In this document: piece after piece, positions 57,475 to 64,000 of the stretch
Numbering within the stretch: position 1 is the stretch's first letter
Layout of the letters: each line of letters opens with the position of its first letter
Assembly: GCF_963853765.1 (NCBI RefSeq)
Contig: NC_088855.1
Span: 21,390,001 to 21,454,000 of the forward strand
DNA: 64,000 nucleotides
Reading direction: 5' to 3'
DNA from: Magallana gigas
Taxonomy: Eukaryota
Translations under genes and position numbers: made by a program
Notes under the pieces: model-generated
Databases searched by the model: none
What the model was told of the DNA's origin: nothing
What the model saw: only the letters and a program-made list of their open reading frames with translations

Positions 57475-59937
57475 TTGAAGTATATACCCAGTAATATCAA
57501 AATTAACATTTTCATTTTAACGCTTGTAAAAGCTAGTTATGTTCATGGATGTTTTTAAAGGTAGCTCGCGGGTTTACCTGCTTGTGAGAAAATCTACCTT
57601 GAAAATTTGTCCACGTTTCAGAGTTTTATTTCTAAAATTTATTTGAGATTCGTCTGCGCGGTACGTAATAATGATATAGTGTTTCAAATACAGTGTCATT
57701 GATAAAATCAAGCAACACAATTTCAATGAAATATATAGTAAAATGCACACCTTAGTCGAGAAACGCATTACAAAACTATGCTTCAAACTTTTATACGATT
57801 CAGACGAAATTAATCATATTCAACACAATAACAGAGCAGATAATTATGAATCAATCAATAAAAAATAATCAGTATGTGTTCTCGGCCAATTTTTGGCAAA
57901 ACAAAAAGATTTCTCAAAACCTTATATTTTCATTACGACGTTAGCCCGACGTCACCATTTCTTTAAAGTCTGAGAACCCAAAAATTGAAATGCATTTATT
58001 GACAAGACTAGCTGATTAACACATTTTAGAACATGTAAATACTAATTAGACATTATTGTGAATGTTATCAAATGCACAAATAAATGTAAGGCTTTAAAGA
58101 TACAGAAAATTGCTATTTTTGTTTTTATGAAACTGAGTCAATCAATGCAAAAGAAATTGCCAGTCAACTACTACTGACATAATAAGTTTGTAATCGTATA
58201 AAATAATTAGCTCAAGCCAAAATAATTTAAAAAATTTGATCGGTAGTTAAAATTACGTAACTTATAATTGTAAAAAAAAAAATTCGAAGTTAATGAATAC
58301 GGTTCAATTAATTTCCTTTTCTATTTTAAAACATGATTTTAAATGGAAGATCGAGTTCCAACGCACACTCATTCTTTATAGAACAAAATGTGACAGTGTA
58401 TGTGGCATCTTTAAATTTTCAGCACTTCATAATTATAAATGTCAACGCTAAAAAGATATAGAAATCTTCTTTACAAAATTCTTCTCTGCCTCTTCTTGAT
58501 TCAACTTTAGATCTTGTAAAACATTGTAATAATCGTTCCTCTTTATAATATGTATTAATGAAGCCAGACGGTTGTGACTATTTTATAGAATTTACCAACG
58601 TTCGGCTTTTCACTGTGTCGAGACGTAAATCATAACGAATTAAAATGAAAAAAACAGTAGTAAGTTTGAAAATGATATTGCATGGACTTGTTGTTCTTAA
58701 CTCAGAGTCCTTATAACGCAATATATTTACATCCACTAAGCACGGTTCCCTCTCTTTCTTACGGTAATTGGTTGTAATTCATTTCTCTACAGAAACTAAC
58801 GGGACTGAAATCTACACGATCCAGTTCTAACCAGTTTGTCGATCAGCAACCTAAGAAAAAAAAGAACACGGACTGCACGAAATAATCATGACGGTGTCAG
58901 ACTTGAATTCCCATATAGTACGACTTAGCTATTTCTTTTGATCTCAGTCTTACTTTTCTGCTATATACATTTCTTTTGTAAAAGTGAGACTGAGATCATG
59001 TACGTTAACAATGATTTAGTTACTTTTACTTACTCTTTACGATCAATTCATTTATTTGTTAAAAGAAAGATGTAATACAAACAATAAACTGCTTTCTTTG
59101 ATTATTCATTCGGGTTATGAACGAAGCAATCATTGCAGAAAGAAATCATTTAATTGTTTTTAAAAAAAATTATTTTTGGTTTACTCACATTAAAGTTAGA
59201 TCATTTCTGATCTGTTCAGGTCTTTTAACTAGTATGGGGCCAGAAATCAATTAAAGATTCGTAATCTTTCTCGAAAGAAAAAACGAAAACATATTTATTT
59301 GCAATAATTGACCCGAAATATTTCACGATCATATGATTACAAATTAATGTCTTTTTAGCTCAAGTTACAATGAGTTGTTTAATCCCAGAACTTTTTTTTA
59401 AAAGAACGTTAAACGTGTTAAAAGCTATTTTAATTGATTTTCTCGAAACGTATAGGTTCAATGGGGTTACATCCAACACATATTCAGTTACTCCCTAAAG
59501 AAGAAAGGAGTAAAGAATTTGTTTAAACTGATTTGGAAATAGCAAAACCTAATAGACCTTAAAATAGATTACAAAAATCATTGTGCGCTTTGACCTCAAA
59601 GCAAATTAGGGTATATACTACTTTTGACGCAGTGAAAATTTACGTAAAATTTCAATTTAAGGGAGAGAAAAAGATAAATGGCACTTCAATTTCTATAATA
59701 TTTATTTTTAGAACAAGATTCAAAGTAGCAAGGTAAAATAGAGCGAATTAAAAAAAAGACCCAATCATATTGCAATGCTGAAGAATTATGAGTTCATTGT
59801 TATAAAGACATAATTTTTCACTTTTTACAGTACATGTACATCATGGCTTTGTGGCGGTAAAATATAAAGTAAAATTCAACGAAAAACAAAGTAAAAACAA
59901 AACAGAACAAAAAACAAACAAATCTTTGGTATCGAGT

Positions 59938-60591
59938 CTATTTCAAAGATATTCTCTCATGTTCAAACAACGTGATTTTCCTCGCATTTTTTAAGCAGTC
60001 CGCTTCAACAAATTTTTGTTTGCAAGCTGTGAATGCATCTCTGGCCTTCACAGGTTCACCTTTTCTCCTGTATAACTCAACTAGAAATTGATAGACCTGT
60101 AAATCCGAATTAATTTCAGCTGATTTAATGAATTTATTTTCAGCGAGATTGTAACTTCCATATGACATTAACCACTGTCCTTCATATTTCAATATTGTTG
60201 TATTTTTATTGTCCGTTATGCTCTTCTCTACCATTTCCAAATAGCTCTCTTCTTGGGAATCAAACGAACGCTTTAACACGTGCATGGTACCATACCTGAA
60301 AACCTCTACATAACCTCGAGTAATAAACTGACGTGTTATTTTCATCACAAGATAATTGTATTCTTTTTGCCTAATCAAACATTTGAGTAAAAACGGAGTG
60401 TTTTGAATATGGACGTAATTCGATATTTGTGACGTAATTGATATTTCTCTGTTGCCATAGAAGGACCACACAGCCAGTCGACTTTCTTTCGAGAACTCCC
60501 TAAACTCTGTATTAATCAAGGAAAACCACGGAACATTTTGCCTCAAAACCGTATATCCTCCAGTCATGTGAATATCCCTGTCCATGAACAC
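59938..60591 (-). CDS. Intronless hypothetical protein (ORF3; 215 aa from the ATG at 60585), directly downstream of the hammerhead
   Basis: Open frame of 217 codons in AT-rich DNA, co-directional with the RT. No recognisable domain. Confidence 0.55.
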   Translation of the reverse strand: MFMDRDIHMTGGYTVLRQNVPWFSLINTEFREFSKESRLAVWSFYGNREISITSQISNYVHIQNTPFLLKCLIRQKEYNYLVMKITRQFITRGYVEVFRYGTMHVLKRSFDSQEESYLEMVEKSITDNKNTTILKYEGQWLMSYGSYNLAENKFIKSAEINSDLQVYQFLVELYRRKGEPVKARDAFTACKQKFVEADCLKNARKITLFEHERISLK

Positions 60592-60659
60592 ACCCGTGAC
60601 GTCACTTTGTTTTGAAAAAAGACGACATCAATCAACCAAACTTGTTGTAAATTTATTAA

Positions 60660-60790
60660 GACCCGACACTCTAGACCACATTATGAGTACACGTTATACA
60701 CTGATATTGTTATTATGGATGCATAGAGTGTTTCGGCGGTTTTTGTAAGAGTTATGGTTTTAACTCTTAAGGCCCGCCTCATCAGGGGTC
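60660..60790 (-). ncRNA. Type I hammerhead ribozyme, predicted GUC cleavage between 60665 and 60664
   Basis: Minus strand: GACCC-CTGATGA-GGCGG[..TAAGAGTTA/TAACTCTTA..]CCGCC-GAAA-CACTCTA[50 nt]TAGAGTG-TC-GGGTC. All core nucleotides and all three stems are present. Confidence 0.92.
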
Positions 60791-62742
60791 TACCTATTAT
60801 GATTTTCACATTTTTGTAATCGTGATTGAATTATCATTTCGCCGATATTCTTGTGTTTACTGTAGGCGATTATAGGTTCATTGGTAAATAGTTCTTTGCA
60901 TATTTCATCATTTTTAAGGACATTCCAGTATTTCAGGATGCGCTTTTTGAGACCCTTCAAGTGTGGGTTGTACTTGGTTATCATGACATTTGGTGGTCGT
61001 TGTTTGCATTTTATATCTGTTTTCACCAAGTATTTTTTTCTATTTGTGTTTTCCATTGTACGCACAGTGGGATCTATTTCCTTATCAGAGTAACCTCTCT
61101 TTGAAAGGTGTGTCTTGAAATCCGTTAGAATTGTAGATAGAATGCAAGGATTACTGGTATTCCTTGTATGTCTGATGCATTCGCCTTTTATGAACCCTTT
61201 AAAGACAGAAGGGCTGTGAGTGCTTTTTCTGTGTAGATATTGAAAATTGTTTGTTGGTTTTATATATGATTTAATATCAAGTATGTTATTTTCCTGAAAC
61301 CTCACGCCTTTGTATATAGTAGTGTCCAGAAAATTGACGCTTTTTTCTGAGATTTCATACGTGAATTTCAGGTGTTCGTGACATGTATTGCCGATGTCAA
61401 AAAATTCTAGAATTTCATTTTGTGTGCCGTTAAAGGCTATAAAACCATCGTCTCTAAATCGCCCGTGGTAAAGAACTTGATTGGCGAGTTTGAATTTTGA
61501 CATTATATAGTTGGTGATTTGATACATTCTTGTATCTGAAATTTCTGGAGATGGTATTGCACCCATACTGCATCCTATAATTTGTTTAAAGTATTTTCCA
61601 TTGAACTCAAAGTAATTGTTTTCCAAGACGCATTTCAATAAGAAGATAAGATCTTCGCTCTCTGGATAAGGAATGTCGATTTGTGGTTTGTTTGCGTTTT
61701 TGTAAGTTTCATTGACGGCGCTGAGTAATTCGCCGAATTCCATGTTGGTATACATACTAGTTACATCATATGTAATTAGTAACACCTCTGCTGGAAGTTC
61801 GAGAGTCTCAATTTTATTGATAAAATCGGCGGTGTCCTTAATATAAGTTGATTGATTTTGTACTATGGGAATGAGAAAGTAATCGCAATATGCGCCGATT
61901 TTCCGTGTTGGCGTATCACACTGTGAAATAATCGGGCGGCCAGGTGGTAATTGTCTGATGCTGCATAGGCCGTTTTGAAGGGCATATCGGACTTCATCTT
62001 TGATTTTGTGTATTTTAGGGAGCAAGTATAAATGACCGCATTTAAGCGATGGTTTGTTATCGCAGAGATAACGATACGTTTCCTTATCTATTGAGCCCTT
62101 AGAGTACATTTGCGTTACTCTATTTTGTATGATATGATGCAAGTTCTGTAGATCTGGTTTATCAACTTGCATGTAATGTTTTGATTTGAGTTGGCGCATG
62201 GCCTCTGCAATATATTGGTCTTTGTCCATAATAACAATTGTATTGCTTTTGTCCGCTTTTTTGATAACAATATTGTTATTGTTTCTCAGAGACGTCAGTG
62301 CTTCTCTTTCAAGCTTAGACGTATTATTTTGAATTTTCTTGATTGGAATAGATGACAATTCTAATTTAGTTTTGTCGATGTAATCCTCTAATGCATAACA
62401 TGTGAATGAGGGGTTGTAACCAGACGGTTTTCTGAATGGGTGAATTGGAAGATTTTCCCCTTTGTCAAAATGATACTTGCATCGGAGTTTTCTAGCAAAC
62501 TCGTCAAAGTCGTTCAAGATGACTTTTTTAGTGTTGCTGTTTTGTGGAGTCGGTATAAATTTTAAACCTTTACTGAGCACAGAATACTCGTGTTGGTTGA
62601 CTTTGTACTTAGATAGATTGAGTACATACTTCTGAGAGTTGTTCTCGTTATTTTTGTATGTATTTTTAAATTGCATTAGATTAGATTGGGATCTACGGTA
62701 GTTTTTTCTGGTTTTGTTCCGTTTATTAAAACGTCTTGCCAT
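60790..62742 (-). CDS. Penelope-like reverse transcriptase (650 aa from the first ATG) with no C-terminal GIY-YIG domain
   Basis: VLNLS..LSKGLKFIPTP, IKKADKSNTIVIMDK, YLLPKIHK, PGRPIIS, YDVTSMYTN, GCSMGAIPSP, RFRDDGF, FLDTTIY, KPTNNFQYL..STHS, PIIAYSKHKNIGEMIIQSRL, then a stop 8 codons later. Confidence 0.92.
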   Translation of the reverse strand: MARRFNKRNKTRKNYRRSQSNLMQFKNTYKNNENNSQKYVLNLSKYKVNQHEYSVLSKGLKFIPTPQNSNTKKVILNDFDEFARKLRCKYHFDKGENLPIHPFRKPSGYNPSFTCYALEDYIDKTKLELSSIPIKKIQNNTSKLEREALTSLRNNNNIVIKKADKSNTIVIMDKDQYIAEAMRQLKSKHYMQVDKPDLQNLHHIIQNRVTQMYSKGSIDKETYRYLCDNKPSLKCGHLYLLPKIHKIKDEVRYALQNGLCSIRQLPPGRPIISQCDTPTRKIGAYCDYFLIPIVQNQSTYIKDTADFINKIETLELPAEVLLITYDVTSMYTNMEFGELLSAVNETYKNANKPQIDIPYPESEDLIFLLKCVLENNYFEFNGKYFKQIIGCSMGAIPSPEISDTRMYQITNYIMSKFKLANQVLYHGRFRDDGFIAFNGTQNEILEFFDIGNTCHEHLKFTYEISEKSVNFLDTTIYKGVRFQENNILDIKSYIKPTNNFQYLHRKSTHSPSVFKGFIKGECIRHTRNTSNPCILSTILTDFKTHLSKRGYSDKEIDPTVRTMENTNRKKYLVKTDIKCKQRPPNVMITKYNPHLKGLKKRILKYWNVLKNDEICKELFTNEPIIAYSKHKNIGEMIIQSRLQKCENHNR

Positions 62743-63227
62743 TTTAATAAAGAATACCCAGAAATGTAGTAGATCTTTGTTACTTATGAGAATCAAAGGT
62801 TCCGTCTACTAAACGACTGGTCGATGTAGTAGAGGAAAGTAACTGGTTTGTTAAAATCCTTGGGAAGACATCAGAGAAGATAGCACGTGGCTTCAAACTA
62901 CGCCCCGTTTGAAACTGAGGCTAATACACCTAAATAACCACAACCCAAGTTGTGTAAACAATCCAAAGATAATGAATAAAAACAAATAATGCAAGTATAA
63001 TGGTATATTCTGGTATCACACGATATATAAACAATACAGTAGTATTATAATCTTTAACTAACAAAGTTAGTTATTAATTTTATGCATGTTCTTGATTATG
63101 AGGGTTTAAAATTTCCAATCATAGAATATTGTGCATCACATTGTCACAAAAACGCTATATTCATTTCGGGTAGAGTGTTTCCAGAAATTTTGATGTGAAC
63201 ACCCCGTTGGTCAGAACATTATAAGTG

Positions 63228-63935
63228 TCAATATGGCCTGCCTCTTAGTTGTTGTCTGCGTGGTCCAGGTCTACGGAAGGGTCTTCCGCGTGGTCTTTTA
63301 GACTGGTCCCGCGTTTGGGAGTTAGATTGGGTTGCTGTTGCCAACCTGCTCCTGAATTCCTGGATTTCCGATATCTGTTCTTGGTTGATTTTGGTAATGT
63401 TTTCGTCAAAGTGACGCTTTTCAATTTCAAAATCAACAGACTGGCGCCTTACTGCTTGGAGAGTTTGATTACGGATTTGGTTACTCTCCATTTCCTTGGT
63501 TTTGATTTCGGCCTCCACATAGTCAAGGACTAATTGGGCTGTTTGTTTATTCTGGGATTCGGCCAAGTCTCGCCAGAATTTTTCAAACTTCTCATTTCCT
63601 TCGCCGTCCAAGTTTAACGCACAGTAAGACCGGGTATGAAACCAAGTCGGAAATTTTCCTGTCTGGATGCCATAGCGTAAGCTTTCTTTCCTCTTTGCCA
63701 GGGTCAGGCGGTTTTGAAGTGTTTTGCGAATTTCTCCCAGTCCTTCAGAAATTATAGTAGATGAATTATCACTTCCCTCTGGAAGGTTGATCGTCAGATC
63801 AAGGTCTGGGATTGCGAATAAGGCTTCCTGGTTTGATGGAACCAAATCATCATCCATTTTGCTTTCATAACTGTTCTGCATATTACTAGTATTAGACTGT
63901 TTCTTAAGAGAGAGTCTGTTGAATCTGTGGAACAT
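63228..63935 (-). CDS. ORF1 of the Penelope-like element (235 aa; probable coiled coil, Arg-rich C-terminus)
   Basis: Intact ORF upstream of and co-directional with the RT. Glu/Gln/Lys-rich helical middle and an RPRGRPFRRPGPRRQQLRGRPY tail. Confidence 0.75.
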   Translation of the reverse strand: MFHRFNRLSLKKQSNTSNMQNSYESKMDDDLVPSNQEALFAIPDLDLTINLPEGSDNSSTIISEGLGEIRKTLQNRLTLAKRKESLRYGIQTGKFPTWFHTRSYCALNLDGEGNEKFEKFWRDLAESQNKQTAQLVLDYVEAEIKTKEMESNQIRNQTLQAVRRQSVDFEIEKRHFDENITKINQEQISEIQEFRSRLATATQSNSQTRDQSKRPRGRPFRRPGPRRQQLRGRPY

Positions 63936-64000
63936 ATTATAGGAATGAGATCGTGAAGTTGGTACACTGCCTTATAGTTTGTCGTAAGGAACATATTTTA

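What the first reader, a model, noticed from the sequence alone, without database searches (positions are those of the whole stretch)
60652..60792. Complete hammerhead ribozyme between the RT stop codon and an AATAAA signal
Seen: the RT stop TAG overlaps stem I (TAGACCC). The core CTGATGA...GAAA, a GUC cleavage triplet and three perfect stems are present. Stem II is extended by a second 9-bp helix and stem III closes a 50-nt loop. AATAAA (60657-60652) lies 7 nt after the predicted cut. Known: PLE termini commonly carry type I hammerheads. Inference: self-cleavage would remove the poly(A) site from the RT message, leaving a defined 2',3'-cyclic-phosphate end and a 5'-OH downstream RNA. The extended arms are larger than minimal PLE hammerheads and may form tertiary contacts.
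Basis: partly seen in the sequence, partly recalled or inferred. Interest (0 to 1): 0.7.

Follow-up and report, generated by a model that had tools for sequence, protein, structure and literature searches.

The report
Working hammerhead ribozyme in oyster retroelement
A genuine, evolutionarily conserved self-cleaving hammerhead RNA sits right after the reverse-transcriptase gene of a tandemly repeated, endonuclease-less Penelope-like retroelement of an oyster, and RNA reads end exactly at its predicted cut; this is a well-supported new example of a known association, not a new kind of thing.

Summary
On the minus strand, 60659-60791 holds a complete type I hammerhead: CUGAUGA, GAAA, GUC, three stems, cut 60665|60664. 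It is not chance. The free-energy fold gives the same three-way junction (z -4.5). The core is invariant and 12 of 19 stem pairs show compensatory changes across oyster families, Pinctada, Mytilus and other relatives. All 22 other loci checked in this genome that encode an endonuclease-less RT of this clade carry the same kind of hammerhead just after the RT, on the sense strand.

In a single-cell RNA run, 11 reads join the template-switch oligo exactly at 60664. One genomic copy starts exactly there. Cleavage in vivo is therefore likely; a transcription start at that base is the rival.

The host is a 3623-bp Penelope-like element without GIY-YIG endonuclease, in seamless tandem arrays. AATAAA is not conserved, transcripts run through it, and genomic copies end 57 nt past the cut without an A tail.

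Hammerheads in PLEs are known. This one is the stable monomeric form, previously described for fungal and protist endonuclease-less PLEs, not the minimal dimeric animal form. The scan noted another copy of this family elsewhere in this genome (s1-361692).

The parts
60786..60791 (-). Stem I, 5' strand (AGACCC); overlaps the A and G of the RT stop codon TAG (60792-60790)
60779..60785 (-). Catalytic core box C3-A9, CUGAUGA
   Evidence: invariant in all 11 lineages compared
60774..60778 (-). Stem II, 5' strand GGCGG (G10.1 first)
   Evidence: compensatory changes at II.2-II.5
60746..60769 (-). Extension of stem II: 9-bp helix (60769-60761 with 60754-60746) with a 6-nt loop, set off from stem II by an internal loop
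   Evidence: the helix is kept (AAGAG/CUCUU) in the 75%-identical subfamily; the length of this insert varies from 8 to 126 nt among lineages
60735..60739 (-). Stem II, 3' strand CCGCC
60731..60734 (-). Core box G12 A13 A14 plus A15.1 (GAAA)
   Evidence: invariant
60724..60730 (-). Stem III, 5' strand CACUCUA
60674..60723 (-). 50-nt loop of stem III. AT-rich, holds a TATAA at 60698-60694. In older copies it is expanded by a 32-nt minisatellite.
60666..60673 (-). Stem III, 3' strand UAGAGUG plus U16.1
60665..60665 (-). C17, the cleavage-site nucleotide; cut between 60665 and 60664. A C-to-U variant, still an allowed H17, is seen in RNA run X23.
60659..60664 (-). Stem I, 3' strand GGGUCU. G60664 is the 5' end of the downstream product: 11 reads join the template-switch oligo here.
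60652..60657 (-). AATAAA hexamer; not conserved across the clade and read through by transcripts, so probably not a working poly(A) signal
60609..60664 (-). Tail: the stretch between the cut and the 3' end of the element or array. It is present at both ends of a cut-to-end RNA.
60625..60638 (-). Conserved tail motif UGGUUGAUUGAUGU (clade pattern TGGYTGATKGRTGT), candidate RT recognition or initiation site
   Evidence: conserved in 11 of 13 lineages while the flanks diverge; role inferred from PMC11167929
60790..62796 (-). RT ORF (668 aa from TTG; ATG at 62745), PLE-type, ending without a GIY-YIG endonuclease
60666..64000 (-). One 3623-bp repeat unit, cut to cut; it runs on to 64288, beyond the window. 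The array is a 779-nt 5'-truncated copy, two full units and the tail.

Best explanation
This is a functional, monomeric type I hammerhead ribozyme belonging to an endonuclease-less Penelope-like retroelement (PLE) of an oyster.

Proposed mechanism:
1. Transcripts that run from one repeat unit, or from an upstream truncated copy, into the next fold the three-way junction and cut themselves after C17 (60665).
2. The upstream piece, which carries the RT reading frame, is expected from hammerhead chemistry to end in a 2',3'-cyclic phosphate (not tested here).
3. The downstream piece starts with 5'-GGGUCUUAAUAAA at 60664.
4. The cut thereby sets the 5' end of the element's RNA. An RNA cut at the upstream hammerhead but not at its own 3' one runs from the cut through ORF1, the RT gene and the hammerhead to a fixed 3' end 57 nt past the next cut. 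It therefore carries the same 57-nt tail at both ends.
5. Reverse transcription starts at the end of the tail and stops at the ribozyme-made 5' end.
6. Jumping to another RNA from there, end to end or through the repeated tail, or copying a ligated circle, would give the tandem arrays.

Shown: the motif, its fold, its conservation and covariation, its constant place after the RT gene, RNA 5' ends at the cut, a genomic copy that starts at the cut, and the constant 3' end.

Inferred: that the 5' ends come from self-cleavage and not from a promoter; the role of the tail motif; and how the arrays arise.
For: - Motif and coordinates read directly.
- Only one descriptor hit in the window, and 1 in 300 simulated windows as good.
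- The minimum-free-energy fold equals the hammerhead junction, z -4.5. The Pinctada homologue folds the same way.
- Among 27 distinct genomic copies the core is kept down to 75% identity, with an A-U to G-C swap in stem I.
- Across 11 lineages (oyster families, Pinctada, Mytilus, four other relatives) CUGAUGA, GAAA and U16.1 never change, H17 is C or A, and 12 of 19 stem pairs show both-sided changes.
- In this genome, 22 of 22 further loci of EN-less RTs of the clade (four further hammerhead variants) have the same type of hammerhead starting within about 150 nt of the RT end. All lie on the sense strand, apart from two antisense hits that look like adjacent inverted copies.
- RNA run X24: 11 reads carry the reverse complement of the SMART template-switch oligo directly after 60664, with the oligo's own three G in addition to the genomic GGG. 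That argues against strand invasion. Six reads cross the site (oligo identity).
- A genomic tail-to-tail junction in which the second copy begins exactly at G1.1 (C9:4742839). The same joint is seen in 12 reads of run X22.
- The 3' end is constant, 54-58 nt past the cut in about 15 of about 20 copies that end in the tail (the rest scatter from 41 to 65).
- The literature proposes this role but calls it unproven (PMC4209133, PMC8557442).
Against: - No in vitro or 5'-OH-specific assay was possible.
- A transcription start at 60664 would give the same read ends and the same genomic junction. A TATAA lies 30-34 nt upstream, at 60698-60694, in the stem III loop.
- Only one tail-to-tail junction exists in this assembly.
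- The lineages in the covariation table were partly picked by a scanner that demands pairing, which inflates the paired fraction.
- Rfam covariance models do not score it.
- Read depth is low, about 5-40x in a 1% sample.
Confidence: 0.8

Rival explanations
1. The RNA 5' ends at 60664 come from a promoter in the repeat, not from cleavage. A TATA-like box in the stem III loop would direct a start about 30 nt downstream. The hammerhead would then be a conserved fold with another role or very low activity.
For: TATAA at 60698-60694 lies 30-34 nt upstream of 60664. PLE repeats are known to hold internal promoters (PMC8557442 on D. virilis Penelope). Template switching favours capped ends. A full-length cDNA would end at a start site just as at a cut.
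Against: The start would have to coincide to the base with the predicted cut. The loop is AT-rich, so a TATAA is cheap. In Mytilus and one oyster family stem III is a short hairpin with no room for such a box, yet core and stems are kept. Invariance of all catalytic nucleotides together with stem covariation is hard to explain without catalysis. Reads cross the site, so substrate RNA exists.
Confidence: 0.1
2. One reading: the ribozyme acts mainly as a 3'-end maker for the RT message. It removes a working AAUAAA poly(A) site so that the message ends in a cyclic phosphate.
For: AATAAA lies 7 nt after the cut and is exact in three lineages. Cleavage does leave the RT message without whatever lies downstream.
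Against: The hexamer is not conserved. Transcripts read through it for about 700 nt with no drop in depth, and no A-tailed ends appear even in poly(A)-selected runs. Element copies carry no A tail and end 57 nt past the cut.
Confidence: 0.08
3. A chance hammerhead-like motif with no function.
For: A motif this good arises about once in 300 random 64-kb windows, so tens are expected in 564 Mb. There is no Rfam hit.
Against: It holds the same position after the RT gene in every family and species examined, with compensatory changes. The fold is strongly favoured. RNA ends lie at the cut.
Confidence: 0.01

Closest known systems
Type I hammerheads of endonuclease-deficient PLEs of fungi and protists (Coprina group), Cervera & De la Pena 2014, PMC4209133
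   Same: Type I topology. A large, stable helix III, so the motif can act as a monomer. Helices I and II of variable size without the classic loop-loop contacts. Sits in the repeat of an RT-only PLE.
   Different: Those elements sit at telomeres. This one lies in interstitial tandem arrays of an animal genome. Stem II and III loops here carry inserts of 8-126 nt. Its RT is closest to animal RT+GIY-YIG elements, so it looks like an independent loss of the endonuclease.
Minimal hammerheads (min-HHR) of animal PLEs (PMC4209133)
   Same: Same core, same type I topology, same place in the element's terminal repeat. An optional extra base after A9 is seen here in Mytilus and two other relatives. The distant relatives of this RT carry exactly these min-HHRs.
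   Different: Min-HHRs have a helix III of 1-2 bp with a palindromic loop and are thought to work as dimers with low activity. This one has 8 bp and folds alone.
Poseidon element of Anolis (PAc): protein-assisted hammerhead and internal initiation of reverse transcription (PMC11167929)
   Same: Tandem repeats; a hammerhead near the ORF/repeat border; a fixed element end set downstream of the ribozyme (the 'tail').
   Different: In PAc the hammerhead overlaps the start of the ORF and needs the protein to cut. Here it follows the stop codon and looks self-sufficient. The tail motif differs in sequence.
Animal non-LTR retrozymes (PMC7229834; bioRxiv 10.64898/2026.07.22.740005)
   Same: Type I hammerhead in head-to-tail repeats. 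Cleavage gives unit-length RNA that could be circularised and copied into tandem DNA.
   Different: Retrozymes are 170-400 nt and non-coding. This unit is 3623 nt and encodes its own RT.
HDV-like ribozyme of R2 elements (cited in PMC4209133)
   Same: A self-cleaving RNA that sets the 5' end of a retrotransposon RNA out of a longer co-transcript.
   Different: A different ribozyme class and a different retroelement class.

Membership tests
Hammerhead ribozyme | Conserved core C3 U4 G5 A6 N7 G8 A9 ... G12 A13 A14 | tested here: met
   CUGAUGA 60785-60779 and GAA 60734-60732; invariant in 11 lineages
Hammerhead ribozyme | Three helices around the core, with G10.1-C11.1 and A15.1-U16.1 closing pairs | tested here: met
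   6, 5 (+9) and 8 bp. The minimum-free-energy structure reproduces them. Both closing pairs are invariant.
Hammerhead ribozyme | Cleavage-site nucleotide H17 (not G) after U16.1 | tested here: met
   GUC here; GUA in two lineages; a GUU variant in run X23 and in one genomic copy
Hammerhead ribozyme | Helices supported by compensatory changes | tested here: met
   12 of 19 pairs have both-sided changes; further ones in other oyster families. Caveat: sequences were partly chosen by a pairing descriptor.
Hammerhead ribozyme | Match to Rfam hammerhead covariance models | tested here: inconclusive
   No hit at gathering or at E<=10, but control min-HHRs of canonical PLEs are missed too. Large loop inserts are the likely cause.
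Hammerhead ribozyme | Site-specific self-cleavage giving a 5'-OH and a 2',3'-cyclic phosphate | tested here: inconclusive
   RNA 5' ends exactly at the predicted bond (11 reads) and a genomic copy starting there. The end chemistry and in vitro activity are not testable with these tools.
Hammerhead ribozyme | Tertiary contact between helices I and II (needed for fast cleavage in vivo) | not testable with these tools
   No classic loop 1. An A-rich strand 5' of the stem II 3' strand recurs in most lineages (raw sequences), which is only suggestive.
Penelope-like element (PLE) | PLE-type reverse transcriptase | tested here: met
   The RT aligns over more than 600 aa at 28-35% identity with metagenomic loci. 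The two checked (L040, L045) encode RT plus C-terminal GIY-YIG, and about 20 of the 80 loci carry min-HHRs. The ADKS variant of the DKG motif and LPKIHK are present. Relatives hit RVT_1.
Penelope-like element (PLE) | GIY-YIG endonuclease domain | tested here: not met
   The ORF stops at the RT-EN linker. No Pfam hit in any of the three ORFs. All close relatives are about 645 aa. So it is an EN-less PLE; such families are known to arise inside EN+ clades (PMC8557442).
Penelope-like element (PLE) | Partial tandem and inverted insertions forming pseudo-LTRs, 5' truncation, tail | tested here: met
   A 5'-truncated copy plus two units plus the tail. Truncated tandem and inverted joints appear in reads. 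Tail duplication.
Penelope-like element (PLE) | Hammerhead motif in the repeat | tested here: met
   This finding.
Minimal dimeric PLE hammerhead (min-HHR) | Helix III of 1-2 bp with a palindromic loop, requiring a second copy | tested here: not met
   Helix III is 8 bp with a 50-nt loop and forms in the monomer fold.
Retrozyme | Short, non-coding, non-autonomous unit | tested here: not met
   The unit is 3623 bp and encodes ORF1 and an RT.

The most novel reading that the evidence does not exclude
A bivalve-wide clade of PLEs that lost their endonuclease relies on a strong monomeric hammerhead to make RNAs with a 57-nt terminal redundancy. These RNAs would be copied like a retroviral R region (strand transfer through the tail), or would close into 3.6-kb coding circles copied by rolling-circle reverse transcription. 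Either route would explain how an element without a nuclease builds seamless, 100%-identical interstitial tandem arrays. That would be an autonomous, protein-coding counterpart of the retrozymes.
Probability: 0.25. Interest if true: 0.65.

Novelty: new member of a known kind. Interest (0 to 1): 0.42.

Why it matters
Hammerheads are known to be present in nearly all PLEs, yet the literature says their role is still unclear and that animal PLE hammerheads cut poorly in vitro (PMC4209133, PMC8557442). This family offers an easy test case: a self-sufficient ribozyme, young identical copies, expression in public RNA data, RNA ends at the cut, and a genomic copy whose 5' end is the cut. It could therefore show directly that ribozyme-made ends feed retrotransposition. 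It also documents an endonuclease-less PLE clade that is spread through bivalves (Ostreidae, Pteriidae, Mytilidae, Pectinidae) and sits inside chromosomes in arrays, not at telomeres.

Tried and rejected
- Rfam scans of the window, the locus and six related loci found no hammerhead anywhere. They also missed the published-type min-HHRs used as controls, so the blanks were set aside.
- Pfam on the window's RT gave nothing, even at E<=10. Homologues and distant relatives had to supply the RT and GIY-YIG evidence.
- A MAFFT alignment of the hammerheads across species misplaced Mytilus and L121 because of the huge loop inserts. I therefore did not use the count of structure pairs or build a covariance model. 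I counted pairs from descriptor-anchored positions in a script instead.
- Two contig look-ups returned no DNA.
- The Saccostrea copy L036 is interrupted in the stem III loop by another retroelement and could not be used.
- L127 showed no hammerhead in the 260 nt printed after the stop, and none of its four CUGANGA sites is an obvious hammerhead.
- The strict descriptor found nothing in 80 metagenomic loci. Only a relaxed one found their min-HHRs, with several false hits on the antisense strand (13 loci against 25), so only the compact, recurrent motifs were believed.
Full report
**The observation.** Read on the minus strand, the stretch 60792-60652 runs as follows.

- UAG stop at 60792-60790, whose A and G open stem I (AGACCC, 60791-60786).
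- Core CUGAUGA (60785-60779).
- Stem II GGCGG (60778-60774), then an internal loop, a 9-bp helix (60769-60761 with 60754-60746), and CCGCC (60739-60735).
- GAAA (60734-60731).
- Stem III CACUCUA (60730-60724), a 50-nt loop, and UAGAGUG (60673-60667).
- U16.1 (60666) and C17 (60665).
- Stem I 3' strand GGGUCU (60664-60659).
- Two bases later, AAUAAA (60657-60652).

**Is it more than chance?**

- A descriptor scan I wrote finds only this site on both strands of the window. The descriptor asks for CUGANGA, helix II of at least 4 bp, GAAA, helix III of at least 3 bp, UH, and helix I of at least 4 bp, with loops up to 260 nt.
- In 300 simulated windows, one motif was as good. The motif alone would therefore not be decisive at genome scale.
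- The unconstrained minimum-free-energy fold is exactly the hammerhead three-way junction with the core left single-stranded: -39.5 kcal/mol against -24.8 +/- 3.3 for shuffles, z -4.5.
- Rfam gives no hammerhead hit. It also misses the classic minimal hammerheads of canonical PLE loci, so this says nothing.

**The host element.**

- The hammerhead region occurs about 70 times in the genome, at 73-100% identity. Eighteen copies share the exact core and stem II pattern used as a probe.
- Copies lie head to tail with a period of 3623 bp on three chromosomes.
- In the sense direction, the local array is a 5'-truncated copy of 779 nt, two full units, and 57 nt more. It ends at window 60609.
- Each unit holds a 235-aa ORF1, the 668-aa RT ORF and the hammerhead.
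- The RT has hundreds of relatives of about 645 aa in Saccostrea, Pinctada, Mytilus and Argopecten. They carry RVT_1, DUF8422 and HTH_animal, and none has an endonuclease.
- More distant relatives (28-35% identity over more than 600 aa) came from metagenomes. The two checked are 1000-aa RT plus GIY-YIG proteins. A relaxed scan found textbook minimal hammerheads downstream of the RT gene in about 20 of the 80 loci: extra base after A9, helix II of 7-8 bp, helix III of 1-2 bp with a palindromic loop.
- The element is therefore a Penelope-like element that lacks the endonuclease. Craig et al. note that such families arise now and then inside endonuclease-bearing clades (PMC8557442).

**Conservation and covariation.**

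- Within the genome, the core survives in copies down to 75% identity. That subfamily has G-C where the main family has A-U at the sixth pair of stem I.
- In Pinctada the hammerhead follows the RT stop after 14 nt and folds the same way.
- In Mytilus it has an extra U after A9, a stem II of GGUAG/CUACC with a 126-nt insert, and a short stem III hairpin.
- Four further relatives add more variants. One has all three stems different (L121). One is circularly permuted, with stem I closed and stem III open (L120).
- Over 11 lineages CUGAUGA, GAAA and U16.1 never change, H17 is C or A, and 12 of 19 stem pairs show changes on both sides that keep the pair.
- A search of the oyster genome with a distant RT found several more endonuclease-less families, many in arrays. 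In 22 of 22 loci a hammerhead of this type starts within about 150 nt of the RT end. All lie on the sense strand, apart from two antisense hits that look like adjacent inverted copies.
- Caveat: the scanner requires pairing, so the paired fraction is biased upward. The fixed position, the invariant core and pairing beyond the thresholds are not affected.

**RNA evidence.** Four RNA runs of the same species label were laid on 59000-64000.

- The element is transcribed at low level.
- In the single-cell run X24, 11 reads stop matching at 60664 and continue with CCCATGTACTCTGCGTTGATACCACTGCTT. This is the reverse complement of the SMART template-switch oligo (identity checked; for example PMC8579666).
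- The oligo's own three G are present in addition to the genomic GGG. This argues for a true RNA 5' end and against strand invasion.
- Six reads cross the site.
- This is the 5' end predicted for the downstream cleavage product, to the base.
- In run X23 most reads have U instead of C at position 17, a variant that a hammerhead tolerates.

**Genomic junctions.**

- About 15 of about 20 copies that end in the tail stop 54-58 nt past the cut; the rest scatter from 41 to 65. None of the ends read has an A tail of its own.
- Reads show the typical PLE joints. The constant 3' end (60608-60610) is followed by 5'-truncated copies starting at 60957, 61462, 61965 or 62572. There is also an inverted joint.
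- One joint, seen in 12 reads of run X22, runs from the 3' end straight to the base after the cut. A junction of this kind is present in the assembly at C9:4742839, where the tail is followed directly by a second tail that begins GGGUC.
- A cDNA that ends exactly at the cut means that an RNA with that 5' end served as template.

**What the cut is for.**

AATAAA is exact in 3 of 13 lineages and absent in others. Same-strand reads continue about 700 nt beyond it at equal depth, and no A-tailed ends appear even in poly(A)-selected libraries.
- What is conserved after the cut is TGGYTGATKGRTGT at +27 to +40.
- By analogy with the Anolis Poseidon element, whose RT starts inside the RNA at a defined site that sets the genomic end (PMC11167929), I infer that this motif marks where reverse transcription begins.
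- The most likely scheme is this. The hammerhead in an upstream unit cuts read-through RNA and sets the 5' end. The RNA runs through its own, uncut, hammerhead to +57, so the 57-nt tail is present at both ends. Reverse transcription goes from the tail to the ribozyme-made 5' end.
- Jumping on to a new template gives either the tail-to-tail junction or, through the repeated tail or a ligated circle, seamless arrays.
- The array mechanism is inference. A circle junction cannot be told from a tandem junction.

**Rivals.**

- A promoter start at 60664 would explain the read ends and the junction equally. A TATAA lies 30-34 nt upstream. I give it about 10%. It needs a base-exact coincidence, the loop is AT-rich, and lineages with a tiny stem III loop keep the ribozyme.
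- Chance is excluded by the comparative data.

**Comparison with the known.**

- Hammerheads in PLE repeats were described in 2014. Animal elements carry minimal, probably dimeric motifs with poor activity. Endonuclease-less PLEs of fungi and protists carry type I variants with a large helix III that cut as monomers (PMC4209133).
- The present motif is of the second sort, but in an animal, in an element whose RT is nearest to animal endonuclease-bearing PLEs, and in interstitial arrays rather than at telomeres.
- I found no paper describing this bivalve clade or its ribozyme, but the library is not complete.
- The scan's first stage had noted another copy of the same family on this chromosome (s1-361692, the copy fetched here as L011).

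**Verdict.** It is a real hammerhead (about 0.95) and very probably active in vivo (about 0.8). The poly(A) interpretation is rejected. It is a new member of a known kind and of moderate interest, mainly as a clean system for testing what PLE hammerheads do.

Noticed in passing
It is covered by same-strand reads that run on from the element, so it is read-through into flanking DNA and not part of the element.
   Followed up: partly
G000:C4:47834891-47835248, C9:28174901-28175066, C4:24411543-24411645; loci L025, L027, L029, L030: In older copies (85-90% identity) the stem III loop is expanded by a 32-nt minisatellite, in one case to about 1 kb. The two halves of the hammerhead are then far apart, a discontinuous hammerhead.
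   Followed up: partly
L120:3496-3590 (ENA contig, 41%-identical RT): A related element has the hammerhead circularly permuted. The cut site and stem I 3' strand come first, stem I is closed by a loop of about 45 nt, and stem III is open (type III-like). A second, degenerate half-motif lies 345 nt downstream.
   Followed up: partly
window 60625-60638 (-) and homologous places in L035, L037, L038, L122, L124, L126, L129, L135, L136, L151: The motif TGGYTGATKGRTGT, 27-40 nt after the cut, is conserved across oyster families, Pinctada, Mytilus and others while its flanks diverge. It is a candidate recognition or start site for the RT.
   Followed up: partly
G000:C6:35353129-35372770, C8:50095822-50105150, C4:39244025-39255210: Several other endonuclease-less RT families of the same clade also form tandem arrays of three to five units in this genome, with intact 640-680-aa frames. 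The Mytilus edulis relative forms arrays with a period of 2566 bp and no ORF1.
   Followed up: partly
L136:3761-3832 (-) and L040:4325-4397, 4684-4756 (-): tRNA genes on the antisense strand lie 50-150 nt downstream of the hammerhead cut in one oyster family and in a canonical PLE locus from a metagenome. They could be an insertion target or a carried sequence.
   Followed up: no
L036:4955-5900 (Saccostrea cucullata): The Saccostrea copy has stem I, the core, a short stem II and the 5' strand of stem III. The stem III loop is then interrupted by another retroelement with an apurinic-endonuclease-like frame.
   Followed up: no
window 62747 (run X21) and 63798 (run X22): Three reads join an unrelated sequence just upstream of the RT start codon (62747). 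The meaning is unknown; it could be another subfamily or a splice. Reads at 63798 join an inverted copy of the hammerhead region, the usual inverted PLE arrangement.
   Followed up: no
L006:2316-2340 and window 60595-60612: The two flanks of the array share a TTTT(A)CAAAA(G)-like string. This could be a target duplication or microhomology at an A/T-rich target, which is of interest for how an element without a nuclease integrates.
   Followed up: no
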